Below the pieces are notes generated by a model. It was not told where the DNA came from, made no database searches, and worked only from the letters and a program-made list of their open reading frames with translations. A DNA stretch of 64,000 nucleotides from Dimorphilus gyrociliatus (taxonomy: Eukaryota > Animalia > Annelida). Below, one piece after another: positions 42,355 through 64,000 of this stretch (within the stretch, counting starts at the first letter, position 1; each line of letters begins with the position of its first letter). The DNA lies in assembly GCA_904063045.1 (NCBI GenBank), contig CAJFCJ010000017.1:957479-1021478 (forward strand). The letters run 5' to 3'. A program made the translations under genes and the position numbers.

Positions 42355-44889
42355 AAATACTGGGATTCAAAAAGAATTGTAGAATACTGCAAAAAAGATA
42401 AAATACAACTAATCAAGACAATAGACATATATGCGATTGAGAATATATTTCATTGTATTATATTTATTTATGAAAATCTATTCATAAATTACATGTGTAT
42501 GTGCGGATGGAAAACCAAGAGGCCAATATGCAATATGAACTGACTTTGTTGTATTGTCAAAATAAATTTGATATTAATTTTATAATTTCCATATACATAT
42601 ATGTAATGAAATTCTATAAAAAATTTATTCTAACCAAATAGATTGTTACTTAAACGATGGTCTTCCTAGAAGCCTGAATATTAATATAATTTTTAACTTT
42701 GAACTTGAGACCTTATGAAAAATATGAGTTATCGCAAATTAGGCTAAATTATATTAGAAAATATTCGTGACGTATCAATGATAAATATCTAATAAAGCCT
42801 TTTCACTTTATAAGATTATTAGTGAATTATCTTCTGTTTAAGTCTAAGATAGGTTTTTTAGAAACATATATAATTTCTGATTTTATCTAAAAGAGAAAGA
42901 CCAAGCTAGGCTTATATATTATTAATCAGTGATTGGTTGATGATTAATAACTAACTGTTCCTTTTTATTTTTGTAGATTATTATCGGAAACAAGAGAATT
43001 GAAACGAAATTAATTCCCAATCGAAACTTAAAAATGATTTTAAGTTTATGATATGGTATAAATGATTGTATGCTAATGTTATGCAACAAATAAAGCGAGA
43101 AATTTAGGTTGAGGACAGAATCAGTATCCTTGTAAACTTAACACTTGAATACAAGTCTGTTTAACTTAATCGTCCTATACATTAACTTTCTTATTTAGTC
43201 AAATGAAACAATTTGATATGTAACCACTTGATATTATTTTCGTTTCTTAATAATAAACTTTAGAGAAAGTGCAGGACTTTGTATCTCTTATTAATTTTTT
43301 TGTTATTAATCTAGTTTCAAGTTGAGGCAATAATTCTTTGCTTTCTTTGTCTTATATATCGTAGAAATCGTAAAAATAAAACGTATTGCGCACAACCTCA
43401 TTTGATGAATACCAGTCATAGAAACTTTGACGAAATAGAGTGATGCAGAACATTTAGGATTTTTTCTTTTCATCTTTATTAAATTAAACAAAACAGTAGC
43501 TACTTTTAGTACGTGTTTATGTTAATAGATTTAGTTGCATTTTGTTAATTTTGGAATGTCATTTTATTTTTTGAATATTCAAGGTAATGCGGCGTGTAAT
43601 GTAGTACTTTAGATCCTTCTTGTATTTACATTTAACAATTGTTATACTTTTTTCTTGGTGAAACCTCGTAAATGACTGAATCAGGGAGACTTCAGAGATT
43701 GTTTTATATTCTGCATATAATCTCAATGCAAAAACTAAACTTGAAAGTACGTGAAACACAAGTTGATTGTGAAAATTTAAGATGGAGGAGGGAAGAGAAA
43801 AGTATAAAAGTACTCCTGTACTCCTTTTGATATCAAAAGTGTTTTACGTCAAACTATAAATATTTCCACTCCTTCACTGACAGCTACAGGAGGATTTTAG
43901 TTGGTTTTTATTGAGTATTTATAAATAATCTAGTCATTATCCAACTTTCGTTTGCCTTTTTCACATTGAAATAGCGTAAAAAAATCTGTAGAAAAAAGTA
44001 ATATTGTTAACATGTTAAGAAGATGATAAGGCAACCAAAAAACAACGAATGCTGATTGTTTTGTAAGATGTCGTCTCTTTTTTCAAAGTTTTAAATAACT
44101 TATCAAGACAATTCGCCATCTATCGCCTGAGAATAATGATACTTGAATGATATTTAATATTTCTTCCTTTTTGTGACATAATTTTAGATTTAGTAGAAAA
44201 TGTTTCATGATAAGAAGAAATAGCATATTTATATTTCAAGTACTCTATCTAACATTTATATTAGTCTCTGAAGGTGGGAAGGTGTGTGTGCTTGGTACTA
44301 AAATAGACGATAATTTAAAGCAGATAATAGACACCAAAAAGATTCTTAAAATATAAATAATTATTATTCAGGTAAGTATGACATAAGAGACTTACTTACA
44401 TTTAGAACTGACAGAGAGAAATAGAGAGTTATGTACTAAAAATTTCTCTTATACCTCTCCTTAAATTATTCATTAACTCAAGGCCTTCATCTTTAGGTAA
44501 ATCTCTTCTGTCTTACCGAAAATTACGATTCCTCTTTGTCTCTTTCTTCATCTCACTTTATCTGCTTGTTACAGAACGACAAAATTTTTTTACGTTTTTC
44601 CTACTTTGAACTTGAATAAATAATTTAGGTGTTGTTTTAAAGTTCAAAGGTCAAGAAAAGATCATTGATTATTTTGCCCTTATGTTTTACATTTAAAGAC
44701 ACAAGTACTGTGTCTTAACGATTGTTTGATTTTAGCGAATTATGCTTTAAATATTTCTCTTAAAGCTACAACACAGTTCTGTAAAACTCGTTTGATTAGC
44801 TTTATTACAGTTAAAGTTTCTATCAATCATGTACAATTTATTTAATTGTCTTAAGTTTCATTATATAACAACAAAATCATGTAATATCT

Positions 44890-45912
44890 TCAAAAAGACT
44901 GAGATTGAGAATCGTCAAGTCTTCTAGCAGAACAGCATTTCAGTGTTATAATGTTTAAGAGAAATTTACGAAACTTTTCTGTTGATAAAATATAGACGAT
45001 CGGATTCCAAAATGAATTAGAATAGATTAACATATAACTAAATAAACTGAAAGAAGATTTTGATATATTATGAATAAAAAATGGTAAAAATGAGATAAGA
45101 GATGCTAAAAAGAGGGTAATTAAGCATTTAGATACCCGAACATTTCTTGTATAACGTTTCATTTCGCCAGATAATTGATCTTTCGCTAATTTATCAGAAC
45201 CTGATGGATAGCTTCTAGGTACATGATGTATTTGAATTGATACGCTCCTCACAAAACCAACTTTGATCTGAGATCGAGTTTTCATTGTCAAAGTAATTAT
45301 AATTAAACTATATAGAATAGCTTGTATAACTGCGCATAAAATGAGAAAAATAGGCGTTGAATACTGGTAAAAACATGAAGGATTCATACATCCACTATTA
45401 CTTCCCACAACTTTAGCTGTCATTATACCCAGTATTGCAGAAAGAATGATAAATATAAGAAACAGAGATCTAGCTAATTTTGCAAATCTTACAAATCTCA
45501 TCGGATATCGTATGAGAAGAAAACGATCAACTGATAGTAAACACAATAGAGCCCCGGAGATTATGATTGAAAATTGAGAAAATCCAGTAAAAAATAGTAG
45601 AAATGATGGATACTTTATTCCAATACTTTCACCAGTAGACGTATTAGTGATTACGGTTACATCTCCAAAATGTAATATTGGCATCAATGCTATTATTATT
45701 ACACAATTGCTTCCACAAAACACCGAGTATGCAGAGAATAGTAACTTTGAGGTTTTACTACCTACCTCTTTCGTGGCAATAAAAATTCCCATTATTACAT
45801 TAATTAAAAAACCAAAAAATGCTACCGTAGGGAAAACTATAGAAATGGATATTAACTCCGTTTTACCAAAAAATTCTGATACACGTTTAGAAATTACTGT
45901 TGTATTATTCAT
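44890..45912 (-). CDS. Intronless rhodopsin-like (class A) GPCR, orphan
   Basis: 340 aa with seven hydrophobic segments, N-terminal NNT sequon, TM3 LSVDRF, TM6 SFLP and TM7 NSFWNPIVY. Confidence 0.88.
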   Translation of the reverse strand: MNNTTVISKRVSEFFGKTELISISIVFPTVAFFGFLINVIMGIFIATKEVGSKTSKLLFSAYSVFCGSNCVIIIALMPILHFGDVTVITNTSTGESIGIKYPSFLLFFTGFSQFSIIISGALLCLLSVDRFLLIRYPMRFVRFAKLARSLFLIFIILSAILGIMTAKVVGSNSGCMNPSCFYQYSTPIFLILCAVIQAILYSLIIITLTMKTRSQIKVGFVRSVSIQIHHVPRSYPSGSDKLAKDQLSGEMKRYTRNVRVSKCLITLFLASLISFLPFFIHNISKSSFSLFSYMLIYSNSFWNPIVYILSTEKFRKFLLNIITLKCCSARRLDDSQSQSF

Positions 45913-46799
45913 ATTAACCTGCAGTATAATCTCTTTGCCTCTTCAGAAATTCCTTCTGCAGACTAACAGAACATAGAATTTCACTTTTGAGGAGATGGCG
46001 CCACAGCAAAATAGAAACAGAGAATCAGAGGAGAGAGAAAAAAGAAATGAAAGAGAGAGAGGTCTCCTAAACTGTGTTATTCATAGTAACTGAAATAAGG
46101 TGATCCAAATGCTTTAATCCGAGGGTATAGAGTTCGATGTTTGCTAATATTTCAATCATAAAATTGAAGCTAATAAGCATTGCTATTCTCGTTGAAGTTT
46201 CATGTAAGTTTTATACTTTGACCAATTTCTTGAAAATGATATCAGCCGACGAAGCGTAAAATCATCTGGATAGACTCGAACCTTCAAATTGTAAATAAAA
46301 TTTAAAGCGGAAAGTAATTGTACTAGTATATTTAAAAATATTACCTGCTCGCCCAAACTGAATAGGCATTCTCTACTAGAGTACTTTTCAAAGATAAACT
46401 TTGGAATCTTAATAATTTGAGCTCCTTTACTTAGCAAGGAAATTCTACATGGGTATTTATCAAATAGACCTTCTATTCCCTAAAATAGGATTTGCCTTTA
46501 TTAATATTGATTAGAAGAAAAATAGAAGTCTATCTAACAAAAATACTATTGGATTGCAAGGTATCTATTTCTGCCAACGTCACATTCTGCTTTGATCGCT
46601 CTCCCTTTTTAAGATCTTTCAATTTCTGTTTAAAGTGTAAAAATTTTTTTTGGATTATTTTCTTTTTTTTTTAGGAATTCGGTGGAAATGATTTTTGCTT
46701 GGACGACTATATATGAAAAACCATAAAATGTAATTATAGGAATAATAGGTCTTGTAATGATTCTTTCAGGGTTATATAACCTGTTAATTAAAGAATAAT

Positions 46800-48414
46800 C
46801 TACATTTTTACAACAGCTGGACACATTTTATCAATATGCTAAAGTGTGTTGTTAATATATTTGATATTTAGAAATCAAAAGAGTATTTGTAAACCTGTAA
46901 TTTAAAGGCGGTTCCAGTTATCCTTTTCCATGCTCGATGTACACCTTTCTTCTCTTTTCGGTGATCATCTGTTATCGGTCTTTCTATTGTTTAACAAAAA
47001 TAACATAAAGATATATATAAGGGAAAATCAATACGTTTCAAAAACAATAATATACTCTGTAAAGGGTGTGTATCAATATCGTACTTAATCTTTTACTGTA
47101 TGTTTGTAAAATGCTGATTTTAAAAATTTGGATTATTTTAAAACACATTGTGGTTTGTTAAACTTGGCTAAACAAGATGGGAACTAAGTTTTTTAATGAC
47201 ATTAAAATTTAAACTTTCATGCCAAAATGGCTTGAATAGAAAACAAAAGCTTTTTGTTTAGAGTGATAATTTCCCTCATAAAACTATAAGAATTGGGCAT
47301 TGAAATGGCTAAAAATTGGCGTTCATTACTTTAAAGTTAACTTATATATTTATTGCGTTAACTCACAGTCCAGACCTACAAAATACTCCAATATATATAC
47401 TAAAGATATAAAAAAGTTCGAACGTTTCTGAAATCTTCCGTCAAAGGGATCAACCTTTATTTCTGCTGATTGCCATAATTCAATTGGTTTTCTCTTTTCA
47501 TATGCATAATCAATTGAATTTGCATCGTCCATTATCGGTGGCTTGATTTTAAAAATGATAATAAAAACATTAAAGTTAAGAATTTAAAAAATTACAAACT
47601 AAGTTCAATTTGTCAAGTTGATTTATTCCAACGAGAATATTTGAGTGTATTTGTTTTCGAATAAGACCACTATTCCATAGCATATTTCCAGCTGATTCTA
47701 TTAAATGATAACTATTGTCAAATGTACCCGAAATAAAATCTTAAATATCAATTTATTACTAGATCGTCTTTGTTTTGCTATTTCTTTGAGTCTTTGACAT
47801 TCTGCTTCTCCGTGTAATCGCCTGAGACATTTTCTCCTTTGCTTTTCGTCGTCAGTTAGTGAGTTAGGCCAATGAATTTCACTTATTACTTTACAAAACC
47901 CCTAAAATATGGTTTTTCTCTTAAATGATGCTTTGAGAAAGAAGAGCCTAACCTTTTTAACAATGATCACATGTTCATTACTGTTAGTAAGAGCCATAAT
48001 GATTTCGTCATCTCTATAGCAATTGAGCAAAAGAAAATGAATAAATATAGTAACAATAAAATCGTAAATTTTATAAAGGAAAAGGAGAGAAAAAGTAAGA
48101 CACAGAGAAGCATGAATAAACCTATAATAGTGGCATATTATTTCCTTTTTCTCTTCATCAAGAAGATCTTGGAATGGAAAGTCTTGAAATAGTTTAATAT
48201 TCTCTCTTAAGTAATCCAGACATTCTACCAACTCCAATTTTCGGAAAACTTTTTCAATATGACTTAATTTAAAAGCTTTAAAATTCTTCTTATAGTTTGA
48301 ATACATAATTCAGAATTAATATTAGAAGGGAAATGCAAGTTACAAATGACAATTTAAGCTTTAAAATACCTGAAGAATATCCAATTTTGTATAATCAACG
48401 TGATATTTTGCCAT
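46800..48414 (-). CDS. Diverged multi-exon gene resembling cyclic-nucleotide-binding-domain proteins (CNBD1/2-like); model incomplete
   Basis: GT-AG-bounded open exons: ECLDYLRENIKLFQDFPF, DDEIIMALTNSNEHVIIVKK|GFCKVI, PITDDHRKEKKGVHRAWKRIT, final HIDKMCPAVVKM*. One internal join is unresolved. Confidence 0.4.
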
Positions 48415-49130
48415 TTTTCATATTAAAGTATAAATATTTGTATATTGACTAATTGGTCGTTGCACCAAGCTAAAATTACCTACTATATTTCATAATTTGA
48501 AAAAGTTATATATTTTAAGATATAGCGCAAATACCTTAAGGAATACAGTTATACTATACAATATTTTAGAAATATAAAGATATTTAACTCTATCTATAAT
48601 CTTATTTATCGTATCCTTCTTTTTATTTATCTATCTTTTTAAAAATGATTTATATTAATCGACGTAGTAAAGGAAAAAACATATTTTTTTGTTTATTCAC
48701 ACTGCAAAAGCTTGAAACAAAAGTAAAAATTAACAACAGAAATAAAATAAAAAAAACAGTTGTGAGATTCAACAGATAATTTTCTTTGTCAAATTTGTGT
48801 TCTACAAATAAAAAACTAAGCCTATGTGTATGAGGGAATACGCTCTAACAGTTTAAACGATATTATTATAATATAACTTAGCGAAGCTGAAAAATATCTT
48901 GCTTCAGGAAAAAACATTGAATTGATCAATCAGCTTCCTAAAATATAACAATAAAAGAGTAAGAGCAAAAAAGCTGTAGTTTGTAGCTGGTTCTTATTAC
49001 ACAGTACATATGGCAGGTAAAGCGTTTGAGTTATTTTTTTTAAACAAAAAAAGAAACATTGAAAGGATTAAATAAATTACTTATTAATATAATTAACATA
49101 AGTTAAAAAGAAGATAAATGCAGAAAACTT

Positions 49131-50081
49131 TCAGTTTTGCATCGACCTATACACGTAACCAGTTTTAGAATCAGTATACAATTTTTCATTTGGCTGACAG
49201 ATGGCACTATTTGACGAGGAGTTGTGACAGGTGGCGCTTGAATCACTCTGCTTGAACGAGGGTCTTTTTTTCGACTCATCTTTTTTCCATTTCATACGCC
49301 TATTCTGTTTGAGAACAAAGGGTATTTATGACCCTACCTTTAAAGAGCATACATAACAGGTTTATTCGCTTAATTTGAGATATCTTTATTTCCTCATATA
49401 CTTTCCTCCCCAGAGGGAGTAGGGGGGAGGGGTGGTGGTTTATGAAGGAAAGAGGACATCAAAAAAATTATTCAAATGAAACGATAAATATTCAATTACT
49501 GGATCATAAAATAATAACAATAAATCAATTAAAAATTATCCACCTGAAACCAAATTTTAACGTTTCTATCCGTAAGACAGAGAGATGTAGCTAACTCTGC
49601 TCTACGAGTTCTCGAAATGTATTTGCTGAAGTGAAATTCTTTTTCCAATTCCAAAAGTTGAGCCCTGGTATACGCAGTCCTAGTTCTTTTCGATTCTTAG
49701 GTAATAAAGCATATTTAATTAATATATACTAACGTTACAAATTACAGACAGATGTATAATTTATTTAAATATTTAATCAACTGTCCCTCAATATAATGGG
49801 CACTGTGTACAGGAAAAAAAAGCACCTGGTTCTATTGAACTTCGACGAGTCAGAGTTCGAGGTCAGAGGTTAATGTTTATTCTTGTCTTGTAACAAGATA
49901 AATTTCAAGAAAAAATATATTCAAGAAACTTACCAGGGGTCCAGTCGTTCTTTTGAGACTTCGAGCATTTCATCCAAGGATAAGGTGGTTCGTGCATGCA
50001 AGGGCTATAAACGTAATCATAAGAACAATTGGGGTAGTCTTCTGGATAATAGGAGACTGCATTCATATAGTTGTTCTCCAT
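49131..50081 (-). CDS. PDX1: Xlox/Pdx ParaHox homeobox gene, 3 exons, about 157 aa
   Basis: Exon 1 (50081-49934) has the hexapeptide [10 protein letters not shown]. Exon 2 (49695-49544) reads [51 protein letters not shown]. Exon 3 (49304-49131) reads [32 protein letters not shown] and KYISR are Pdx-diagnostic; all joins are GT-AG and in phase. Confidence 0.92.
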
Positions 50082-53000
50082 TGTATGCAACTGACGCTAT
50101 CCTTATCAGAGAAGTCACGTGATAAATATTCTAATCTCCCCAAGTTAGTTACAAAATTCGGGCGATCATTCTTAAACGATAAGGAGCGGACGTTGTCAAA
50201 GGTTCCTTTATTGACAGACATGTGGCTAGTTTAGATTATATTGTTAAAACATTGAATGATACAGAAAAAAAGCCAAAGCATATGCTAGGTAGTAAACAAT
50301 TATGCGATAAAACATACTAATTAATAATGATTGTTTATAAAAGTTCGAAATATTATCATAATGCAAATATTAAAGAAGAAAAATTACTTAAGAAAATATT
50401 ATTCCAAGATAATACTCTAATTCTTCTTCTTCTCCTTTTCTTCTATTTCTTTTTATTTTCCTCCAATCGTATTGCTGCCGAACAGGATACTGAAGGAAAA
50501 AAGAGTAATAAAACAGGGGAGACAGGCCGACTGCAAAAGAGGCGTCAAACAGCGTAATTAATGAGACAATTTGTGCTTTTCGGTGACGCGTGGAATGTTA
50601 TTATTGTTATAAAGACAAAAAATAACATTTAACTTTTAATTTGATTTGATTAATGGATGAAAATTAATTTATATTTATTTAAAGCTTCATATCTTTCTCC
50701 TCCTTTTTACCTATTTTCGTTAATTCAAATTCTCAATTTCAATTTACTATTGGTAAGAATAGCGAAGAACAGAGAGAGAGAGAGAGTGAAGGGGTGGCAA
50801 AAGATAGGATAATATAAAATTCTACTAAATAAACAAGATGTTTTTAATGAATTAATACATTATCAGCAAAAAATTTCAATGGGAAAGTTTGTTTTTACAC
50901 CTTGCGATTTTTTTTCTCACTGCTGTTTAAGCAAAGGAAAAAATGAACATTTCTCTCATTTATTTCGTTATAAAAACTATATGAAATGTTTGAATGAGTA
51001 TTTTGCTGTATATTCTTTCGGTTTAAACAGAAAGCGCAGCTGAATAAGAGCGTATCGCCCATTCAAAAGTAGTTGTTTGAATAGGCGACACTGGAGCAGA
51101 GTGGGCGTGGCTAGGCTGTCTGTCCCCCCAGCGGGGCGCCCTCTACACCACTCAGCGCGGTCAGCGTTGACCACATGTACCGCTGTTAATGAGCTGTCTT
51201 AATTAGTAGTTTTAACAGTTTAGGGTGAAATGTCCTTTAGGGCGTCGAGTATCGGCTTTGATGTTTTTAAATACAAAGTAGCTATTATCTTGTTTATTCG
51301 TGCACGCCGCTTTACGATTCATTATTCGCGCCTTTTCACTGTTTATTTTCAGTTCAATTCACTATCCCCTGGGCGTTTTAAAGCCTTCTCATCAACAAGA
51401 CGTCTGTAGCACGCGTGCCTTAACGATTACAAAATCTCCTAAACTTTCGATAATTCTTAAATCTGTTATTAAAGGAGTTTTCGCTTACTATTTCATTTGA
51501 ATGAAAGAAAGTGAAAGTTTCTCAGAAAACGATACTCCAACTGTTAGAATCGAAACAGTTGATGAGTCTATATTTAGTTACAAGTAATTGAGTTGAATCA
51601 ATTGGATCGTGGGTAATGGTATACAGCGACTTTACGTAAGTTTCTTGTATAATGTACTCTGCAGGTAAAGCATTAATTAAGGAATTAGCCCCGACGAAAA
51701 AAGTGTCACTTATGCAATTATGATGCAACTTCCTCGAAGAAAGTTAGGCGCGTGCGAGCGTCTAGAATGACTCCGTCAGTGACGCCATATTGCACGCTCA
51801 ATAAAGCGTTAAAACGACTCGAACGTTCTCTCCCGTCTGCCAGAATCAGTGCTGACATTAAATGTCAGTATTAAGTGGCGCCGATGCACCAACGCCATTC
51901 AATCTGTTCACGAATAATGTTTTTTTTCTACTTCTCGCTTTCGCAGGAATAGAAGTTGGGAGGGGCAAAGAAAGTAAAGCTACGTTTCTTTTTCCGTTTA
52001 CTTTTTCTTTCTTAATCTAAAATGTTTCAGTCAGTAATGCAAGAAGCTACCAACTTTGAGTGGAAGAAGACGAGTGGGCAGGTGTTTCATCGGCATTCCG
52101 ACACGCCGAGAAAAGATCCGTTACGTCACGAGTTTGTTTGATTTCTTTTCAAAAGAACCTTCGTGATCGCTGGTCGTTTAGAATAATTATCGAGTTTTTG
52201 GGGCGTCTTCGTAGATGGGAAAATAGCATCGTCAGAACTTGCCGCTGCTCCTTTCTTATTAAGCTAAAAAAGGCAATAGATAAAGTAAAAGTGTTAGAAT
52301 AATTTTAAGTTTGTGTAAATCAGATAGACAAGAAAGAAGACCATATTTAACGCTGTGTTTAAATCGCCAACGGCTTTTCTTCTCGTCAAAATGGGGGGCA
52401 GCGTTTTTCCTATGACGCTCGCGTGGATTCATACAAATTGGCAATTAGTTTACTGCAGGTGTCCGTCTGTGACGCTGCAGTATATGCTTAAACAATACCG
52501 GTTGACCTTCTTTTCGGAATGTCATCTGTTTGGAAACTTTTGGAATTTTTTCCATTTAACTATAAATAAAAGTTGAAAAAGATTTACAAATTCTTACGTT
52601 AAACGATTTCTTTCTTGCCCTTTTTCATCAAATAAATGCTACCCTTTTCATTTTGACTGATAGTCCATCAACATACTTGTTTAGCTATTTGCTGAACAAT
52701 TAGAACAGTTTATAAGAATTTTTAATTTGGTAAAAATTGAAAATTTAATATAATAGCATTGCGTGCACTGAATATACAAGTACAATGCCACTATTCAGTT
52801 TATTTAATGTATATAAATAGTAATCCAAGTTATTTTGCTTTTCAATCTAATCAAACATTGATCCGATATTGTCAAGAAAACATTTTTTAATATAAATATA
52901 TTGTCATGTCGAATGTAAATGTTATCTTTTATATTTTAATACCTAGAGGAACGTCGAAATATCAAATATCATTGAGATTGGCGTTCTATGATGACGGTAG

Positions 53001-54188
53001 CGATAAGAGCAGCGTCCCAACCGCCTCTTCCCAGCTCTGTAAGCATCTTCGATGACGTCTAATTGAAAGCTTGAAATATAGCGAAGGTTATAATTTTATC
53101 TAGCCAGATTCTCTACAATACGTTATATACTTCTGTTTTCACATCAAAAGAACGCCGACATATGTGAAAACTGCAGGATGCTAACTGCTTCTATTTCTCT
53201 CGATCCATTTAGATTATCGAATTCATTCTTTGTTCGAAGCGTGTTAGCTAAAAATGCGCTAATTTCGTTCGAAAATTCATTACGTGTAATTTATAGAATA
53301 TAGCATTTTTTACAGACCAACAATTGCCTAAGGGTTCCTCATAAAAACTGTGTACGGGTTAGGACGACAAAAGACTAACTTTGACAGCGCCACACACCTG
53401 GCGCTTCATAACAAGATTAAGTTTATCTATCCAAAAACGACCGCCTTGTAATAATGAGGCGGTAGATATTCTAATCGATCCCAAGTGCCCTGTTTAGTTT
53501 CGCCTTAGAGATTTCTTCCGGATGATGGACATGCGGTTCGATTTATTACAATCAACTGACCCGTGACTTGTTTGTGTGTATACAGTCATGTCAGTTACGA
53601 ACCCTTGGTGGGCTATTTAAGGTTTATTTATAAAACTTCAGCTTGAACGTTTCACTTGCACATTCAAAAAAGAAAAAGAAGGTCAAATTTAAATGGAAAA
53701 ATGTATAACAATTATACATATTTATTAATATAAACTTACAAACACATTATTATAAATGAAGTGTTATACTGTATATTAACTTAAAATAATACATTATTAA
53801 CTGTTATAGATTCAGGTCAAAATTAAGTTGCAAGTAGAAAATTAAACTGTGTTTAATTTATCAAGTCAGCATCATAATGTATTCTTTCCTTGAAAGTTGG
53901 CTTAATATGCAAAAAGTAATAAATTGTAGAAAAGTCTGTCATAGTATAAATATTTATATTGAATATTAGATGCATAAATAATACATAAAGTATGTTCCGT
54001 ATACATGCATAGAAGTAAAAATATATACACTATTGACGCTGTTTATACACATATACACGCAAGAGTGTAAAATGGGAAATGAGTGGAAACAGAGAGATAG
54101 AGGATAGCAAAATAATTTTCTATACATTATAATAAAATACAGAAGACGGCACATTATGAAAAGTCATTTATTGACTATTCCTCATTTT

Positions 54189-54905
54189 TTAGTCAACAGA
54201 TAATTCCATCGACGATGCTATATCATCCTCTTCTTCGGAACTTTTTTCAATAATTGATGAACTATCGGCTGCTCTCATTTCACCGTCTTCCTTCTTCTTT
54301 GAACTACAAGTCCTTAATAAGCAGCATCGGCATTTATTCTTCTCATTTCCAACTTCTTCTTTCTTATACTTTACTCTTCTATTTTGGAACCATATTTTCA
54401 CTTGTTTTTCACTTAAATTTAGATATGTTGCAATTTCTATTCTTCGCAAACGAGATAGGTACATATTCGAAGAAAATTCTCTCTCGAGTTCGAGTAATTG
54501 AGTCGATGTAAATGCTGTTCTCATTCTCTTAGAGCTTGGAAGATCATCAGCAGGTCCGTGTACAGAGGACGGAGGTGACACGGAAGGAGCTAGTTTTTTA
54601 GGAGGAGAAAAAAAACCTACTTAATAGAATCTCATGTACAAAGTATAAAGCAATATATGCTTACCATTTCTAGGACGGTTTGTATGTCTGACCAAAGCTC
54701 CAGGAAACTGTGAAGCTAGAGGGTTGAATTGAATTGCTGAACAGGACGTGCAGCACATTCCGCTTAATCCTTGCTGATGGCCTCTTGCTGCACATTGAAG
54801 GCTAGCCATAGCTTGCGACAAACCCAGATTAGGGGTGGCCGGCCGACTAGATAAAGTAGTTGGCTGTTTGAGAATTAACGAATCGACATAAAACGAACGA
54901 GACAT
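54189..54905 (-). CDS. GSX: Gsx (GS homeobox) ParaHox gene, 2 exons, about 222 aa
   Basis: N-terminal [11 protein letters not shown]; homeodomain [58 protein letters not shown]; 48-nt intron 54664-54617. Confidence 0.96.
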
Positions 54906-57161
54906 TGTTGGCTAGTCGTTGTCGAGTCAACTTTTTGCTCATAATCTTTTCGAAAAGAGACGAACACAAGTTTATAATGAGTTATTCACTTTTCACTATT
55001 TTGTGATTGGTTGTATGAATTTCGGGCTGTCCAATCAGCTTCGCGTATGTAAATAAGCTTTGTTTAGGGGGATATTTGTTGTTCTTTGTGTAATTTTTAA
55101 TTAGGGTTCGTTATGGGATTTAATTAAGGGTGATAAAAGGATGAAAGAAGAGGGACTGGTGTATGATTTTTATTAGGAGAGAGCTTTAGGACATTCTAGA
55201 CGAAAAGTGTTAAAAACTTTATAAATCTTATCAAGATTTATCTCAATCGTCTTTTATTACCTTACTGGGTTTTCTTGCATTCTTCAATTTAACACCCTCG
55301 GCAGTCTTAACATTCGCATATGTCGACCCGAATTAAGGTCATCTTCTAGAAAATTATTAATCTTATTATGTCTACAAAGATAGCAATTAATTTCACTAAT
55401 ATGACACGTCTCCAGCAGTCAAGTAAGTTTTTCTTGCGCATTCCACTAGATGACCTTTCCGTGTTAAAAGAGATAGCCATCTATCGTATTAAATTTAGTT
55501 ACGACGCCACCTGCCGTCAATACGATTATCGGTACCATAGAGAAAAATACCTTTTTAATCATTACTGTACTTTTGTATTGCGCACAAAGTACTCGAAACA
55601 AATTGAACACGTGTTAAATTTATTCAAGCGTTAGTTCGTTGTACGCTAATCAACCTAATTTATCCTACCTTGCCTAGCGTGCTTCAACGCTTGACCTTCG
55701 CATTGACGTCTTAATCTGAGGGGAAGGAAGTTTTCCCTACTTTTCTTTCTCTTTTTCCTTAGACTTGAAGTTGTATTTCAACTTATCAATACTTCTTTCA
55801 TTGTTTGCAATAGAGTACAAAAAAAGCTAATAAAAAAACAAAATCTATTCATCTTTGTTGAAATTTCTAAGTTTTTTCCTATATACATAGTTAGAGATTA
55901 TATACTATCCCCTCTTTTGTACATATTAATAATCTATCTATCGATAACTTGAAACTATTTGAAAAATTTGTTCATTTTGTTCTCTTAAATCGAGATAAGT
56001 GCATAATAAATAAGATCACACGCTTTCGTGTTTGCGCAAATATTATCATTATGGCACGAAATATGCAAACAGTTTCTATTGGCAGACTTTATCGAATGAA
56101 ATTTTTATGCTATGTTAACGGGCTCAACAAAAAAAAACAATTACATAAGAGACTTTTTAATAAAGCTTTAAACGTTTAGATTAAGCTCTATGTGATAGAA
56201 GGAGGCATATATTAATAAAAAAAGGATTTCTGTTGAAGAGAATAACCTATGAAATAATAAAAAGTGAGAAATTTTTACATAATAAAACTTATAAATATTG
56301 TTCCTTTCTATTAGTATATTTATTAATAAACTTGAATATTTTATGGCAGAATGAATACATTAAATTTGAATTTATTAATATGAAAAGCTATATTTTTTGC
56401 TGTTATATAGAAAAAGACTTTACTGAAAAACAACTTAAAACTTTAAAGAATAAAAATAAATGCTTCTTGTTTTGTTATTTATCTACCTAAACACAAAAGT
56501 TTGGGTAGAGTTTATAAAGATTTCATGCGGGAGCTTGAATAGTATAGTTAAAAGGTAATTACGGTCATAAAATGCCGTAATAAATTCCTCTCCAGTCAAC
56601 GTTAGCCCGTAAATTTGTGTGTACTATTCAAAACGAAATATTCAATAAACTCAACATTGGTAATCTTAAAATAACTTAATTAATTTCTATGATAATTGAG
56701 TAATTTTCTCCTTTAAGTAAATTATGCTAATGGTGTATAATAAAAGATAAGGTTGACAAAATATACGATAGATGGCGTGATTTAATGTTTTAATTTTCTT
56801 TTCTTGCTTTCTTTCGCTTCACGACAATGACGCAAAGGTATTAGAAAGGATGTGTTGAATTGAGGGAAAACATATTTAGGTTAAAGGTTATACTTCTTAT
56901 GTAAATGTTAGTCTCTTACGAGAAAAGGCTTCGTTATTTTTTAATGAGGAGAGAAGAGAGGGCTTTACAGATTGTTTAGTCCTACAGTGAGTAACACTCG
57001 AACCAACCCTTAAAACTGTACAAGAGCATTTTATGACTTAAATGACCATTTAAATTTCACACATCATCACGAGCATGCTAAAGATTATTACATAATATCC
57101 ATTTACAACAATTGTTGTATTCTTTTTCTTTTATAAAGGCTAAATGCTAAAGCAGGTGTAT

Positions 57162-58043
57162 TCATTGTAGCAGTCCGTACATGATTTCAGCACTATGCCT
57201 ATCTTTTAAACGCTTGCCTCTCTTATGGCTAATAGAGGAGGGAAGTGAATAATATGAACTACTCAATCTGCTACTTGTCGTCGAACTTAAACTTCTCGTT
57301 TCTTCCGAACTCCAGCCGGAATCATGACTGTCCGTGTCAATAAGAACGATTTTATTGCCATCACAATCTGATTTAGATGAAGGTAGTAGAGGTAGAACGA
57401 ATCCAGTGTTCAAATAGAATGAGACCGATAAGTAAGGTAGATTGTATAAAACGACAGCTGGATGGCATTGCTTGATAGCGATCTGCAGATAGGGAGTGAT
57501 ATTGAACAGGCAAAAATCTGATTTGATGCAATCTCCTTCCTTTCCCGTTAATAGTCTATAAACATGTACGCTTTCTGGAAAATTTTTTGTGAAAATAACC
57601 AATCTTAGACGTTCGAGGGAACTTTCTTCTACCGGAGATATTGAACAGCAAGGCAGGTGGTTGTTAAGTGTGTAAAATTTTTGTTGACCAATTCTTATTG
57701 TTCCTTTAGAGTCAGTTCTTTCTATTTTGTGGTGAAACATCCAAGGTTCTGTATTGAGAATCTTCTCTGCTTTTTTAAAAGATGATCTCTCCTTTAACAA
57801 GACAGTTATAGCTAGAGAAGGAACCCTAATTTCATCCCAAAAGTCACGGTGATCAATTTTTTCGAAGTAGTTATCGTCTGAAGATTGAAAGAAGTTTGGC
57901 AAATCTTTCGGTAATATCCTTTTTAGATTTCTCATAAAAAACTCATATAAACTTTCATTAATGTTCACATGAACATTACAGTTGCTTGTTTGCATCCTTA
58001 AGCCGGACTGAATTGACTCCCCAAAGTCACTCACTAACGCCAC
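57162..58043 (-). CDS. FAM124: FAM124-like protein, intronless over the ORF (first ATG at 57995)
   Basis: PWMFHHKIE, QKFYTLNNHLP, LRLVIF..VHVYRLL..KSDFCLF..LQIAIKQ, LPLLP..DCDGNKIVL match FAM124A/B motifs as recalled. Confidence 0.75.
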   Translation of the reverse strand: MALVSDFGESIQSGLRMQTSNCNVHVNINESLYEFFMRNLKRILPKDLPNFFQSSDDNYFEKIDHRDFWDEIRVPSLAITVLLKERSSFKKAEKILNTEPWMFHHKIERTDSKGTIRIGQQKFYTLNNHLPCCSISPVEESSLERLRLVIFTKNFPESVHVYRLLTGKEGDCIKSDFCLFNITPYLQIAIKQCHPAVVLYNLPYLSVSFYLNTGFVLPLLPSSKSDCDGNKIVLIDTDSHDSGWSSEETRSLSSTTSSRLSSSYYSLPSSISHKRGKRLKDRHSAEIMYGLLQ

Positions 58044-61000
58044 CTATCCAGCGTCCGGATTTTAAGTCGGTAGGTAAAATAGCGCAACAAACTGTTTCGG
58101 ATCAATGCCTCGGTTACAATAACTATGAATTATTTCAGCGCCTTTCGCACCGATCGCAGTTCGAATATAAAAAGACCTTTTTCTGACAAATCACATGATT
58201 AATCGGTTCTTTAAGCTGCTAGTCATTTATTGAATGGAACGAAATGTCCATAATTTATAACTTATTATTTTACCATAAATCTTCTCTACCTGTAACATTT
58301 ACTTATTTGTTCATACAATTTTATACAAATATATGAACATTTATTTTTCTATAATTTTCATACCTTTTTCGCAGAATGCTTATTTATGTGAAAGAGATAT
58401 CTATTCAGCTCATCAATTTATCTTCTTAATAGTCAGGAAAAGACAGTTTCGTCGCCTTTCGCTGTGGGTAATTTAAAAGCCATTATTAAATGATTTTTCT
58501 TCTCTCTTTCTCAACTTTTGCATATTTACGATTGAGAAAAGGAAAAATTTTTTTTTAACATCGATACAATAGTATCTTTATTTCTATTTTCACCCTTCTT
58601 TTTATAGTTCTATTCTCTTCCCTTTCTTCTCCTCTTCCCGTCTTCTCTTTATGTATTATATGATATTCTTTACGATCTCAAAACATTTTTTCCCAAAGTT
58701 AAATAGACTAATTAACTTGAATAAATAAGGATAAAAAATAGTCTTTTATCCTATTTCAAAACTTACATAAGAAGAACAAAGTTCAAGATAGAAGTTTATT
58801 TATTTTATAGACAAATTAATATAAAAAGTATAAAGTACCATTTTCTCTTCGATTTTTTCTGTTTAATTATCATTTACACAAAAAAAATAAAAGAAAAGAA
58901 GTCAAATTAATAGATAAATCGTTTATTGTTAACCTATTATGGGTCAAAAAATTAACAATGAGTCTCTTCAATATTTGTGACAAATAAGAATACACTGGCC
59001 AGTTCACAATAAACACCGCTATGGACAAAAAATTTTGATTTTTTATATAAATTTGACAATTATGCAATTATCTAATATAAATATAGCGCATTGTTGTTAA
59101 AGATAAACTTGGTCGCTATTTAGATCATATAAAATCATAATTTTTTCTGTGAATAGAAAAAAATAAATTCGTTTAAACCGTCACTGACCTTTTTTGTGAT
59201 AAGAAACGGTAAATAAAGAAAATTTTAACAACCTGCCGAAAGAGGGGAGAATGCTTTGATTCTGTTTCTTTTTACATCTTTTAGCTACTTGTTTAACGTC
59301 GGTAAAGACGTAAAGTAAACAAGAATAAATGTTGTATATTGATTTTAACTCTAATATCGCTACATTTGAAAACTTTAATGAGCTTAAAATAGTAGAAAAT
59401 CCCTATTCCATCGAATGCAGGCAAATTTCGATGTTGGCAGTTGAGGTATAAGTTTCATAAGGTATATAAAAGCTTACTGCTTCACTTCTATACATAGAAG
59501 ATAAATATAGTCTTTTCTCACGTATAGTGTAAATTCTATTTCTTTTTAAAATCGACACCGCCAAATGTAAACTCAACCTTTGACCTGAGGAAATCATCGA
59601 ACCGTCTGCCGTGGGCTAGATGGCAATCGTTGTGATTGGCCTCTTTTTGAATCCTTTTGATGTTCGACCGGCTTCTTTTGAAAAGACGTGTTATTCTCAG
59701 ACCATTGGTTCTTTATTGAACCAAAAAATGCTAGTCTTTTCTATTCTCTCTCTCTCTCTCTTTCTGTTTTTCTCTCCCTCTCATGCTCTCTCTGCCTGTC
59801 AGTCTTTCCCAGTCATTTCTTCATTATTTAACACTTTTAACGGCTATTTATTACTTATTTGTAAAATTATTTTCTTTCAAATGTCTAATCATTACATCAT
59901 TAAAAGATGACTTTTCTCTTTTGATAAAGACATACAGAGTCAATTAAAGCCAGAGTGTTTTATGTGAGGCGAGAGGGGGAGCGAGTAATTAATTGAGTTT
60001 TAGATTTTGAGTAGGATATTAATTGGCTTAAGTTACTGTGTGGGAGGCTGTGTGGGTGGAGATATATTCGTTCTTAAGAAATAAAATAACAAGAAATAAA
60101 GAAATGTTCACGCCATCTCACAAAGATAAAAATAATGAAAGGGATAGAAAAAAAGGAAAAATAAATATTTATTCAATTTAGGTTTATGTCAAGAGTTTGA
60201 TTAAAATACATTTGTAGTAGTACAATATTTTTTTTATGATTTTTTTAAGACTCCCTACCAACACCCCCTTTGGTTTTGTGTATTGTTGTGTTTTAGCCCG
60301 TGTCAATCGCTTTGATTAACGAGTAGGGGTATATATTCCTTTATTACCCTTTTTTTTTATCTATTGACTGATTTGTTTTGACAAGTCTAATTTTCTCATT
60401 TCTTTTAAACGGTTTAGTTGACGTCTAGGATTTATTATCATTTTGTGAAAAGCGTTCATCTAATTAGATCAGTAGGCCGAAAATTTGAAAAACGAGAAAT
60501 TCATAGTATTTTAAAAATTTTTTCTTATTTTAATAGACCTTTCAATGCATTAATACATATGTATGACTTTTACTTACAAATAATAAAAGAAACTAATTAA
60601 TTCGCGATTACTTTCAATCTGTTGTTCAGTAGTTGTGAACTAATCCTAAAGTTTCAAAGGAACAAACCAGATGGCGCATCAATAGGAACAAATGCCTCTC
60701 GCTTTCCCACTTGCCCTCACGCCACATCGTTTTAGAAAGGAAAGGAAGTTTCGCCATCTATATTTTAATGATGAAATTAAAATATAGTAATCCTCTTTTC
60801 CCCTTTTATTTGCCTAACTTTGTAACTTAATAATAATTTTATTCGTGAGTATTACAAATTTGATCTAAGATTGAAGTATAGAAAAAATAAGTAAATAACT
60901 AGACGATATCTCGTGTTTCTTTGCCTGCCATAATCGATACGGTAGGGATTAGTTTTGGGTTAAGCACTCCAAGTCCTTTCCTTTCTCCTGTAAGACGGAA

Positions 61001-63518
61001 AGGAGGAAACCTTATAGGGAAATTATTGACACGCGAGCAATTTCAACCACGAAATAGTTCCGCTTTTTCTTTCTTCCTTTCTTTCTCTATTATTGCTTTC
61101 TTTCTCTCTGATCACTTTAATATTCTTAAGAATACCTGGAGAAAAAATTAAATGACGTCATAAAAAAGAATTGAAAAAGAATAATATAGGTTAATTCCCT
61201 AAAATTGCTTAAGTATTATATAGAAGTCGATATTTAGTGGGAAATAGTTACTTTAATCTATAATATAACACAGATTGATTATTATTTATTGGATAAAAAT
61301 GATAATATTTAACAAAGAAAAATGAATAAAACTGTGAGAAAGTATCTATTTTCTCATTATTATTTTAAGCATTCCTAGAAAAAGAAAGTTGAAGAATAAA
61401 GATACTTAGCTTTTAATGAAAGTAGGTGGCGTTACTGAAAACAATTTAAAGGTTTTATACCATGAATAAAATACAACCGAAAGATGGCGTAGCGTTTATG
61501 ATAAAGCGGTAAAAGACACTATCGAAAAAAGGGATGAAATAAAAAACTACTGTAATCTTCTAATCTGACGATCTGTCACCCTCGTTCGATATTATCTAGC
61601 CGAATAGTGGAAAATGTCGGCAATTTTTGCCTTATTTAATTACGTATGCATTGGAAATTGTTATAAAGAAAACCGAATTAAGATATTATTTTCTTTGTGA
61701 CGGCGGCCAGAACCGATTACTCATTCAATGTTTGCGAGATGAAAATATCCAGCTCTTAATCTTTTTTATCTCTCTTCCGGAGAGAGGAATATCAAGATAT
61801 CAAGTGAGTTTTTTCTTTCTTTCAACTCATCCTATAGATAATTTATTTTTTCTTTCACACTTTTATACTGAAATCGAAATTAAAAAAGACAAAGGAGAGA
61901 AAAATATGGAAAATCGTTTAAATACTACTAAAATTCAACATAAGAATAAACGTTTTACGACTGATTTATATTTGTCATATTAATTTTTAAGGAAATAAAA
62001 ATACCACATTTTTCGAGAGTATGCAGGTGTTTTTCTCATAAAACTCTTTTAATTAAAACTTTTATTTAAAGTAAAAAGGGAAAAGTAGAATATAAAAAAA
62101 AAGAAAAGTAAAAAGTTTACTGGCAAATCGTTCAAGTTTTGTAAAAACAAAACTGATCTTTCCTATATATGTAGCGGAAAAATACAATTTTAGTATGACC
62201 AAAGCAGATTTTCCACCTTATTCCAGATGTTGAATCGCGTGCCGGGTGATGAATGCATGAACTATCACGCTTTTAGGAGAAAACAACTGCTCTCTACTCA
62301 AATTATTAATTAGAACGAGAAGATAAGAAAAAATTACTGCCTGTCATTAATGCTTGTGCATATGGTTTGCATTTCACGCTTTAGAGAACTTTGTAATTTC
62401 TCCCCCATTGCCCATCTTTGTTTAACTAGTCTTATTTTTTTTTCTATCATTGTCTCTCATCCTCCCCCCTCCCGACTCCCAGTCCCACCCCTCTGTCTGC
62501 TTGTCTAGCTGTCGGTCCGACAATGTCTAACTCTCTTTCGTTCGCGTTTTTTTTTCCTTTTTTTTTAACTCATTTTCATTTTCTATCCCATTATTCCTTC
62601 ATCTTGTCAACCTATTGTACGCTTAAACGATTAAATCGGGTAAAATATGTACAAATCTATTCAATTATTCCGCTTATCAACACGCATCTGTAATTCTCTT
62701 TTAAAAGGTTTCTTATAATATAGAAATAGTTTTATAAAATCACAAGAATTTTAAAAGAGATGCCTTTTTTTTAAAAAAACAAACTTAGGATAAATACTAA
62801 TAATCATATTATTACAAATTGGATAAAAGGGCTGTTGAAGATAGAGAAATCTCTGTGTACATTAATTGTTTGGATAAAATATGGCCAAAAAAAGGGAATT
62901 GTTAGAATAAACATTTAAAAGAAGAGAACAAGTTATCTTTTGTTTCTCAGTCTTTTTACTTTTAGAGTTTACTTTAAAGAATCCATAAATCGCTTGTTTA
63001 AAGTAAAAACGAAAAAAGAAAATAATGGAAAAAGGGAGTGAATGAATAAAGAGTAAACTATATCAGCTTAAAACTAAAAGGGTCATAAAATATATTCGGA
63101 TCATAATTCTTTGTATTGTGTCAACTTTAAACTAGTGTCATTGTTTTTTTTCCATTCTCACCCTTCGCCCTGTTTTTCCCTTTTTAACGCAAGTTATGGC
63201 GGTTTCACGCTGATCAACAATTAACCAAATATTCTAAATACTTCGAGTACATAGCTAAGCTTCTTTATGGGGCCCGACTTTTTCAGATCATGACCTAAGT
63301 AAATAAACAAAGTCAGCTTTGGTTTGGAACAATAAAAAACAAACAAAAGAGTGAACAAATAAACAAGGTGGCGTTTGTCATTTACGTTTGATTGTACATT
63401 TCATTTTAAATATAGTAATAATAATGATATATATTGTATATATTTATCGGATGCTGGGGTAAGGGGAGTAGAGGTTAGAAACAGAATTTTTTGTTAATAA
63501 TAGCATGTCAACATCACA

Positions 63519-63720
63519 TCACGTGAGAGGAGACGCCTGAAAATGAGACTAACATTGGGAATAATATACTGAGAGAAGAAGGATGGCTTATAAATAGTTT
63601 GACCGAAACTGTATAGGTGCCAACTCCCATGATGCACATATGCCACTACACCTGTTCTTAATGTCGGAGAGGGGCGTCACGTGGCGGAAAAGGGAGCGAT
63701 TTATTCATCTATATATTGTT
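63519..63720. promoter_or_regulatory. Probable promoter of a gene beyond the window (two E-boxes plus a TATA-like element)
   Basis: TCACGTGA 63519-63526 and GTCACGTG 63676-63683 in a GC-richer patch, with TATATA at about 63710. Confidence 0.35.
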
Positions 63721-64000
63721 TAATATAGAATGAAGGCAGGCGACTTTGGAATGAAAATTAAGCTAGCTGTGCGGACGGAATGTAAATTGTTCGCATGCGA
63801 GTGTCCTTTTTCGCGATTCGACGACGATTCAAAGTGACAAGGCCCAAGCTGCCGACTAGAATCGTAATAATATTGAATAATAACCCCGTTCGAAATGAGA
63901 ATAAAGCGAAAGGGCAAAATTATGATTGCATTCATATTATATTATACTATAAATACGCCGGCATATGAAGGGGTTAGGCGTTCAAGGAACAATAAATTTT

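What the first reader, a model, noticed from the sequence alone, without database searches (positions are those of the whole stretch)
49131..54905. Ultra-compact Gsx-Xlox ParaHox pair (under 6 kb) with a cryptic three-exon Xlox and no Cdx
Gsx (54905-54189) and Xlox (50081-49131) are adjacent on the same strand, in the chordate order and orientation, with only about 4.1 kb between Gsx stop and Xlox start and no intervening gene. The Xlox homeobox is invisible in the ORF track because it is split over two small exons, so the gene is easily missed and could be wrongly scored as lost. I found no Cdx signature (KYRVVY..RLELEKEF) on either strand. Intact or partial ParaHox linkage is rare in protostomes and Xlox is lost in insects and nematodes, so retention at this size suggests shared regulation.
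Basis: partly seen in the sequence, partly recalled or inferred. Interest (0 to 1): 0.85.

Follow-up and report, generated by a model that had tools for sequence, protein, structure and literature searches.

The report
Compact Gsx–Xlox gene pair, Xlox unannotated
In the miniature worm Dimorphilus gyrociliatus, two body-patterning genes (Gsx and Xlox) sit 4.1 kb apart as in other annelids; Xlox is intact and under strong selection but missing from the public gene list, so it could be miscounted as lost.

Summary
The window is the last 64 kb of Dimorphilus gyrociliatus contig CAJFCJ010000017.1. Gsx (54905-54189, minus strand, 2 exons) is the annotated DgyrCDS10980. Xlox (50081-49131, minus strand, 3 exons, 157 aa) has no gene model in GCA_904063045.1 and no predicted protein in the databases searched.

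Xlox identity rests on:
- a homeodomain tree (Xlox/PDX1 clade 96/92);
- PDX1 as the best solved-structure match;
- a PWMK motif;
- a phase-1 intron at the same place as in leech Xlox.

A second intron splits the homeobox between residues 50 and 51. It is absent from leech and other Xlox genes, so it is a lineage-specific gain.

A related Dimorphilus lineage (Logan run SRR23372229) keeps all three exons and their splice sites (52 synonymous vs 10 non-synonymous changes). I found no RNA evidence.

No third homeobox lies in the window, so Cdx is absent, as in other annelids. The 4,107-bp spacer holds no gene. It is about six times the local intergenic median, and 55% of it is at least 90% identical to the relative, against about 40% at synonymous sites. 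This points to dense regulatory DNA; shared regulation is untested.

Verdict: real, useful, but a new member of a known kind.

The parts
54665..54905 (-). Gsx exon 1 (80 codons plus 1 nt; starts with the Gsx N-terminal motif [11 protein letters not shown])
   Evidence: Part of annotated DgyrCDS10980.
54189..54616 (-). Gsx exon 2, with the whole homeodomain and the stop codon
   Evidence: Pfam Homeodomain, E = 1.6e-22. Falls in the Gsx clade, support 98/90. Against the sister lineage: 80 synonymous and 11 non-synonymous differences.
50082..54188 (.). Gsx-Xlox spacer, 4,107 bp, with no gene. Blocks at least 90% identical to the sister lineage: 53654-53337, 53270-52888, 52557-52382, 52228-52049, 51945-51619 (holds a 194-bp perfect run, 51886-51693), 51429-51012, 50670-50582 and 50303-50082 (Xlox promoter and 5' region).
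   Evidence: for conservation. No coding signature in any ORF. No Rfam family or tRNA. No annotated gene.
49934..50081 (-). Xlox exon 1: N-terminus, a P-x-C-x-Y motif and the YPWMK hexapeptide. Ends in phase 1.
   Evidence: The phase-1 intron lies at the same place as in Helobdella Xlox.
49696..49933 (-). Xlox intron 1, 238 nt, 89% identical to the sister lineage; a candidate intronic regulatory element
   Evidence: Genome-wide median intron is 66 bp, and introns with open chromatin are larger (PMC7854359).
49544..49695 (-). Xlox exon 2: homeodomain residues 1-50
   Evidence: Pfam Homeodomain, E = 2.1e-18. Best solved-structure match is PDX1, 2h1k. Xlox clade support 96/92.
49305..49543 (-). 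Xlox intron 2, 239 nt, phase 0, between homeodomain residues Q50 and N51. A lineage-specific gain.
   Evidence: Absent in Helobdella Xlox and in uninterrupted genomic ORFs of other species.
49131..49304 (-). Xlox exon 3: homeodomain residues 51-60 (begins NRRMKWKK), the C-terminal tail and the stop codon
   Evidence: Conserved in the sister lineage.
54906..56200 (.). Conserved region upstream of Gsx (80% identity to the sister lineage, with windows up to 93%); a candidate Gsx promoter and enhancer region

Best explanation
This is the Dimorphilus gyrociliatus remnant of the ParaHox cluster. A functional Gsx and a functional Xlox lie in tandem, Gsx upstream on the same strand, 4.1 kb apart with nothing between them. 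Cdx has been separated from them, as in other annelids.

Shown:
- Xlox is a real three-exon gene. It keeps the ancestral phase-1 intron between the hexapeptide and the homeodomain. It has gained a second, phase-0 intron inside the homeobox, between residues 50 and 51.
- That split, and probably low expression, explain why the public annotation lacks it.

Inferred:
- Both proteins act as ordinary ANTP-class DNA-binding transcription factors.
- The spacer, the Xlox promoter and Xlox intron 1 are packed with conserved non-coding sequence and most likely act as cis-regulatory DNA for one or both genes.
- This regulatory load would explain why the spacer stayed about six times longer than neighbouring intergenic gaps, and may be what keeps the two genes adjacent.
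For: Organism and Gsx:
- the Gsx ORF hits DgyrCDS10980 at 99% identity.
- it lies on contig CAJFCJ010000017.1.

Xlox identity:
- PDX1 (2h1k) is the top solved-structure match at 74.8 bits; the next is 67.1.
- Among the best single-domain database hits looked up, those that carry a source name are 'parahox xlox' or PDX1, apart from one 'hypothetical protein'.
- Homeodomain tree: the window and sister sequences fall inside a clade of 40 Xlox/PDX1 rows (96/92). Gsx falls inside the Gsx clade (98/90).
- The gene has [13 protein letters not shown] and KYISR signatures, and PWMK followed by K-S...W.
- The phase-1 intron matches the position in Helobdella Xlox.

Function:
- The sister-lineage contig L002 keeps all three exons, all splice sites and the reading frame; the one indel is 6 nt and in frame.
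- Xlox: pS 0.61 against pN 0.027. Gsx: pS 0.54 against pN 0.021.

Not annotated:
- Only FAM124 and Gsx are called across window 44189-64000. The same table is dense at a control locus, with 10 genes in 21 kb.
- No Dimorphilus Xlox protein appears.

Spacer:
- Overall identity 80%. 2,253 of 4,107 bp lie in blocks of at least 90% identity, and there is a 194-bp perfect run.
- By contrast, identity is 53% downstream of Xlox, and intergenic DNA at a control locus is unalignable.
- No coding signature and no known RNA family.
Against: - No transcript evidence was obtainable. No Logan-derived protein of the spliced gene exists in the database, so transcription and splicing are inferred from conservation only.
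- With 60 columns, the AU test does not formally reject grouping the gene with the Hox3 rows (p = 0.16; log-likelihood 23.9 worse).
- The nearly invariant Xlox residue His44 is Asn here, and Pro29 is Thr (Ala in the sister lineage).
- The conserved non-coding blocks were compared with a single related lineage. No deeper conservation was detectable.
- A regulatory role, and above all sharing between the two genes, is untested.
Confidence: 0.85

Rival explanations
1. The two genes are neighbours only through ancestry and genome-wide compaction. The conserved spacer blocks are private enhancers and promoters of one gene each, probably mostly Xlox upstream elements. No shared regulation holds the pair together.
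For: - The genome is compacted throughout, at about 209 genes per Mb (PMC7854359).
- Annelids in general keep the Gsx-Xlox linkage at very different distances and even in different orientations: 42 kb head-to-head in Platynereis and 88 kb in tandem in ERZ26052378. No particular arrangement therefore seems to be required.
Against: Nothing here discriminates shared from private elements. Retention of the pair without an intervening gene across several annelids fits either view.
Confidence: 0.45
2. The highly conserved spacer blocks are exons of an unannotated non-coding RNA or a micro-ORF gene rather than enhancers, so there would be an intervening gene after all.
For: - A 194-bp perfect run and several runs of 80-100 bp are unusually strong conservation.
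- The annotation is incomplete here: it misses Xlox and a GPCR.
Against: - No ORF in the spacer shows a coding pattern. Mismatches are even across codon positions, and the sister lineage has frameshifts and stops.
- No Rfam family with E below 0.6, and no tRNA.
- The blocks are rich in TAAT-type cores, which is typical of developmental enhancers (my reading of the sequence).
Confidence: 0.1
3. The second homeobox gene is not Xlox but a diverged Hox3-like or other ANTP-class gene.
For: - The AU test cannot reject a Hox3 grouping (p = 0.16).
- His44, the most Xlox-specific homeodomain residue, is missing.
Against: - The free tree places it in the Xlox clade at 96/92, with a log-likelihood 23.9 better.
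- PDX1 is the best solved-structure match.
- The top named database hits are Xlox or PDX1.
- The KYISR and YTRAQLL signatures, the motif after PWMK, the intron position and phase as in leech Xlox, and the position next to Gsx all point to Xlox.
Confidence: 0.03
4. Xlox is a decaying pseudogene that merely looks intact in this assembly.
For: - No annotation and no transcript-derived protein.
- Derived homeodomain residues.
Against: - 52 synonymous against 10 non-synonymous differences from the sister lineage.
- All four splice sites are kept, the one indel is in frame, and there are no stops.
- The constraint is the same as on Gsx.
Confidence: 0.02

Closest known systems
Platynereis dumerilii Gsx-Xlox pair (Hui et al. 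2009, PMC2723086)
   Same: - An annelid with Gsx and Xlox adjacent and no gene between them.
- Cdx is broken away from the pair.
   Different: - Platynereis: 42 kb apart and head-to-head.
- Dimorphilus: 4.1 kb apart and in tandem, with Gsx upstream. This is the chordate-type orientation, also seen in ENA assembly ERZ26052378. It suggests that tandem is the older state and that Platynereis carries an inversion.
Chordate ParaHox cluster (amphioxus; human GSX1-PDX1-CDX2)
   Same: Gsx upstream of Xlox/Pdx on the same strand, with no intervening genes. The tandem orientation in chordates is stated in PMC2723086.
   Different: - Cdx is not adjacent here: 49 kb of non-homeobox genes lie downstream of Xlox.
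- The scale is far smaller.
- Expression collinearity is unknown.
Vestimentiferan tubeworm ParaHox genes (PMC10291997)
   Same: Gsx and Xlox are kept together. Cdx lies far away on the same chromosome (about 41 Mb in Paraescarpia) or on another scaffold.
   Different: Those genomes are large, and no split homeobox is reported for them. Dimorphilus is the compact extreme.
Helobdella robusta Xlox (HELRODRAFT_100536) and typical two-exon Xlox/Pdx genes
   Same: - A phase-1 intron just after the Trp-containing motif that follows PWMK.
- The same homeodomain signatures.
   Different: - The Helobdella homeodomain sits in one exon. Dimorphilus has an extra phase-0 intron between residues 50 and 51.
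- The Dimorphilus protein is short (157 aa).
- It has Asn instead of His at position 44.

Membership tests
Xlox/Pdx (ParaHox, ANTP class) | ANTP-class homeodomain | tested here: met
   Pfam PF00046, E = 2.1e-18 on exon 2 alone. Exon 3 supplies NRRMKWKK.
Xlox/Pdx (ParaHox, ANTP class) | Groups with Xlox/PDX1 homeodomains rather than with Hox3 or other families | tested here: met
   The clade of 40 Xlox/PDX1 rows plus the window and sister sequences has support 96/92. PDX1 is the top solved-structure match. Caveat: the AU test against a Hox3 grouping gives p = 0.16, so that grouping is not formally rejected with 60 columns.
Xlox/Pdx (ParaHox, ANTP class) | Xlox-specific homeodomain residues ([21 protein letters not shown], His44) | tested here: inconclusive
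   The first two signatures are present, the second as KYISRTRR. His44 is Asn, in the sister lineage too.
Xlox/Pdx (ParaHox, ANTP class) | Hexapeptide PWMK with the Xlox-type continuation, and a phase-1 intron before the homeodomain | tested here: met
   [14 protein letters not shown] resembles FPWMKTTKSHAHQWKAQW with a short deletion. The intron phase and place match Helobdella Xlox.
Xlox/Pdx (ParaHox, ANTP class) | Expression in the mid-gut or endoderm | not testable with these tools
   No expression data could be reached. No transcript-derived protein was found.
Gsx (ParaHox) | Gsx homeodomain, N-terminal SFYVDSLI motif, and placement in the Gsx clade | tested here: met
   Clade support 98/90.
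Intact ParaHox cluster | Gsx, Xlox and Cdx all adjacent | tested here: not met
   Only two homeoboxes in 64 kb. There are 49 kb of other genes downstream of Xlox. The contig ends 9.1 kb upstream of Gsx.
Intact ParaHox cluster | No non-homeobox gene between members | tested here: met
   For the Gsx-Xlox interval only: no annotated gene, no conserved coding ORF, no Rfam family or tRNA.
Intact ParaHox cluster | Spatial or temporal collinearity, or shared regulation | not testable with these tools
   Only indirect evidence: dense conserved non-coding sequence in the spacer.

The most novel reading that the evidence does not exclude
The 4.1-kb spacer, together with Xlox intron 1, is a miniature genomic regulatory block. 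Its ultra-conserved distal enhancers, some serving both Gsx and Xlox, physically lock the pair together.

This would mean that D. gyrociliatus kept distal intergenic regulation at key developmental loci, although the genome paper suggested that such elements may have been lost with compaction. It would also offer the smallest bilaterian ParaHox locus in which every regulatory element could be dissected.
Probability: 0.3. Interest if true: 0.55.

Novelty: new member of a known kind. Interest (0 to 1): 0.4.

Why it matters
- Gene-content studies that rely on the public D. gyrociliatus proteome will score Xlox as lost in this model of genome compaction. It is present and under strong constraint.
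- The tandem, Gsx-first orientation in a lineage that the genome paper places as sister to Errantia plus Sedentaria (PMC7854359), and in a second assembly, supports tandem as the ancestral annelid and bilaterian arrangement. Platynereis head-to-head would then be derived.
- A new intron inside the homeobox is an oddity in a lineage known for net intron loss.
- The pair with its flanks spans about 7 kb, and more than half of the spacer is nearly invariant between two lineages that are close to saturated at synonymous sites. This makes it a very tractable place to test whether shared enhancers keep ParaHox genes together.

Tried and rejected
1. Transcript evidence. Two profile searches were built so that a spliced Dimorphilus Xlox protein would score at the top (the second used exon rows from both lineages). 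Neither found one. Exact look-ups of the exon ORFs found nothing. No Logan contig encodes full-length Gsx either, so low-level transcription factors seem not to be assembled there. Transcription stays untested.
2. Representative-library search with exon 2. No hit exceeded 84% identity, so no annotated or predicted Dimorphilus Xlox exists in that library.
3. AU test of a Hox3 grouping: not rejected (p = 0.16), which reflects low power with 60 columns.
4. Deeper conservation of the spacer in more distant Gsx or Xlox loci (L003, L005, L006, L011-L014). Only the homeoboxes align.
5. Rfam and tRNA scans of the locus. Nothing above chance.
7. Locating Cdx in the assembly was not possible. No whole-assembly search is available, and a protein search would not have ranked a diverged Cdx among the 120 hits listed.
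8. Literature. No paper in the library describes the Dimorphilus Gsx, Xlox or Cdx genes or their linkage. The genome paper uses ParaHox sequences only in a tree legend.
9. Pseudogene reading: rejected on the substitution pattern.
Full report
**Where the window comes from.** The Gsx exon-2 ORF matches NCBI protein DgyrCDS10980 of Dimorphilus gyrociliatus at 99% identity. That protein is encoded on contig CAJFCJ010000017.1 (1,021,478 bp) of GCA_904063045.1, and the locus geometry shows that window position 64000 is the end of the contig. The window is AT-rich (about 31% G+C) and gene-dense, as expected for this 73.8-Mb genome (PMC7854359).

**Checking the observation.** Reading the minus strand and assembling the exons in a script gives two gene models.
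- Gsx has exons 54905-54665 and 54616-54189. Its 222-aa product is identical to the annotated protein.
- Xlox has exons 50081-49934, 49695-49544 and 49304-49131, giving 157 aa. The splice sites are canonical: GTAAGT...AG in phase 1, and CAG|GT...AACAG in phase 0.
- The first ATG of Xlox is preceded by an in-frame stop.
- The homeobox is split. Exon 2 ends at WFQ (residue 50) and exon 3 starts with NRRMKWKK.
- Without splicing, the exon-2 frame stops after five more codons. This is why no ORF shows a whole homeodomain.
- A six-frame motif scan of the whole window finds these two homeoboxes and no other, and no Cdx signature.

**Orthology.**
- Pfam finds a homeodomain in both genes.
- For Xlox exon 2, the best solved-structure sequence is PDX1 (2h1k) at 74.8 bits; the next is 67.1.
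- In a HMMER search of 1.84 billion representatives, the best single-domain hits are 78-84% identical. Of the ten looked up, three carry a source name: two are 'homeobox parahox xlox' and one is a Helobdella 'hypothetical protein'. Named hits in the later profile search are mostly PDX1.
- The gene has the signatures [13 protein letters not shown] and KYISR.
- It also has a YPWMK hexapeptide followed by K-S...W. This resembles the Xlox motif FPWMKTTKSHAHQWKAQW with a short deletion.
- Its N-terminus carries a P-x-C-x-Y motif that aligns with the PPACLY of vertebrate PDX1.
- A maximum-likelihood tree of 120 homeodomains places the window sequence and its sister-lineage copy inside a clade with all 40 Xlox/PDX1 rows (96/92). 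Gsx falls inside the Gsx clade (98/90).
- Class labels in that tree were assigned by motif, but many rows also carry PDX1, Xlox or GSX names from their sources.

There are caveats. An AU test that forces the gene together with the seven Hox3-like rows costs 23.9 log-likelihood units but is not significant (p = 0.16). Sixty columns have little power. His44, which is nearly invariant in Xlox, is Asn here.

Independent support comes from gene structure. Helobdella Xlox has a phase-1 intron in the Gly codon after '...NWI'. Dimorphilus has a phase-1 intron in the codon after '...DWTP', within one residue of the same place.

**Is Xlox functional?** A Logan contig from run SRR23372229 (L002, 14.7 kb) covers the same locus in a related Dimorphilus lineage.
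- All three Xlox exons, both donors and both acceptors are conserved. The only indel in the coding sequence is 6 nt and in frame.
- Xlox shows 52 synonymous and 10 non-synonymous differences (pS 0.61, pN 0.027).
- Gsx shows 80 and 11 (pS 0.54, pN 0.021).

The two genes are thus under equal and strong purifying selection, across the splice junctions. This rules out a pseudogene and supports the three-exon model. It does not replace transcript evidence, which I could not obtain (see 'tried and rejected').

**Annotation status.**
- The gene table for the NCBI record lists only FAM124 and Gsx between window 44189 and 64000.
- The same table lists ten genes in 21 kb at a control locus in the same window, so the table is not sparse in general.
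- No protein with the Dimorphilus exon-2 sequence exists among the representatives.
- Two profile searches of 5.8 billion proteins listed none either. The second was built so that a spliced Dimorphilus protein would rank first.

Xlox is therefore missing from the public gene set. A single-exon GPCR at 44890-45912 is missing too. No paper in the searchable library describes the Dimorphilus ParaHox genes.

**The homeobox intron.**
- Helobdella Xlox has two exons with the homeodomain entirely in exon 2.
- Uninterrupted genomic ORFs that hold the whole Xlox homeodomain occur in many other species, for example P0150 on a 5.5-Mb contig and P0162.

The phase-0 intron between residues 50 and 51 is therefore a gain in the Dimorphilus lineage, shared by both lineages compared. 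It arose in a genome otherwise marked by net intron loss (PMC7854359). Both Xlox introns (238 and 239 nt) are about 3.6 times the genome's 66-bp median.

**The spacer.** Gsx stop to Xlox ATG is 4,107 bp here and 4,426 bp in the sister lineage.
- Nine CDS-to-CDS gaps at the control locus have a median of 641 bp. By local standards the spacer is long, not 'ultra-compact'.
- Against the sister lineage the spacer is 80% identical overall.
- 2,253 bp (55%) lie in blocks of at least 90% identity.
- There is a 194-bp perfect run, and 1,101 bp lie in perfect runs of 40 bp or more.
- Xlox intron 1 is 89% identical and the Xlox promoter region 94%.

The contrasts are sharp:

| Region | Identity to sister lineage |
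|---|---|
| Synonymous sites (Gsx, Xlox) | 39-46% |
| Xlox intron 2 | 63% |
| Downstream of Xlox | 53% |
| GPCR coding region | 65% |
| Intergenic DNA at the control locus | mostly unalignable |

No spacer ORF has a coding signature. Mismatches are even across codon positions, and the sister lineage has frameshifts and stops. The antisense ORF over Xlox exon 1 served as a positive control and shows an 18/0/3 pattern. No Rfam family and no tRNA were found.

The most likely reading is dense cis-regulatory DNA. The genome paper suggested that distal intergenic elements may have been lost with compaction, and this locus looks like an exception. Whether any element serves both genes is untested.

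**Comparison with what is known.**
- In Platynereis, Gsx and Xlox are 42 kb apart and head-to-head, with Cdx at the other end of the chromosome arm. That paper contrasts this with the tandem chordate arrangement (PMC2723086).
- Vestimentiferans keep Gsx and Xlox together with Cdx far away (PMC10291997).
- Among lophotrochozoans, a complete three-gene cluster is reported only from the scallop Patinopecten (PMC13161344).
- In an unnamed ENA assembly (ERZ26052378), Gsx and Xlox homeobox exons lie on the same strand 88 kb apart, Gsx first.

Dimorphilus thus shows the usual annelid gene content and linkage, in the chordate-like tandem orientation and at the smallest spacing I am aware of. That ranking rests on my own knowledge and was not searched systematically.

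**Cdx.** None lies in the window. Downstream of Xlox, where Cdx lies in chordates, there are 49 kb of unrelated genes: a GPCR, a mitochondrial carrier, a Rubicon-homology protein, an acyl-CoA dehydrogenase, PIKfyve, a lectin, MARF1, WAPL and others. Upstream, only FAM124 and 6 kb without long ORFs precede the contig end. Linkage beyond that point cannot be judged.

**Verdict.** New here are:
- the missing annotation;
- the derived homeobox intron;
- the selection evidence;
- the strongly conserved spacer.

This is a new member of a known kind, of moderate interest.

Noticed in passing
window 44890-45912 (-): A single-exon, 340-aa rhodopsin-type GPCR (Pfam 7tm_1, E = 6e-13). It has no gene model in the public annotation table, and its exact protein is not in the collection. 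It is conserved in the sister lineage at about 65% nucleotide identity.
   Followed up: partly
window 47902-48306 (-): A 134-aa ORF 0.8 kb downstream of Xlox. Part of it (48306-48115) is 77% identical to the sister lineage, where a 67-aa ORF is called. It has no Pfam match and no annotation. It may be an exon of an unannotated gene.
   Followed up: partly
window 58044-64000: About 6 kb without any ORF over 118 aa between FAM124 and the contig end, which is unusual in this gene-dense genome. It holds only three short pyrimidine-rich tandem repeats. It may be a regulatory desert of a gene beyond the assembly break.
   Followed up: no
L002, L007-L010 (Logan runs SRR23372228, SRR23372229, SRR23372231, SRR31984834): These runs come from a Dimorphilus lineage whose coding DNA is only about 80-86% identical to the reference, with synonymous sites near saturation. 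It looks like a distinct, possibly cryptic species. It is useful for phylogenetic footprinting of the whole genome.
   Followed up: partly
window 49696-49933 (Xlox intron 1) and 50082-50303: The intron holds a TGACCT-type half-site pair and a small palindrome. The promoter holds a conserved CACGTG about 30 nt upstream of the ATG. Both are nearly invariant in the sister lineage.
   Followed up: no
L011 and L012 (ENA ERZ26052378, contigs ctg11651 and ctg8170): The same 180-aa Xlox exon ORF occurs on two contigs of this assembly. These may be haplotigs or a recent duplicate.
   Followed up: no
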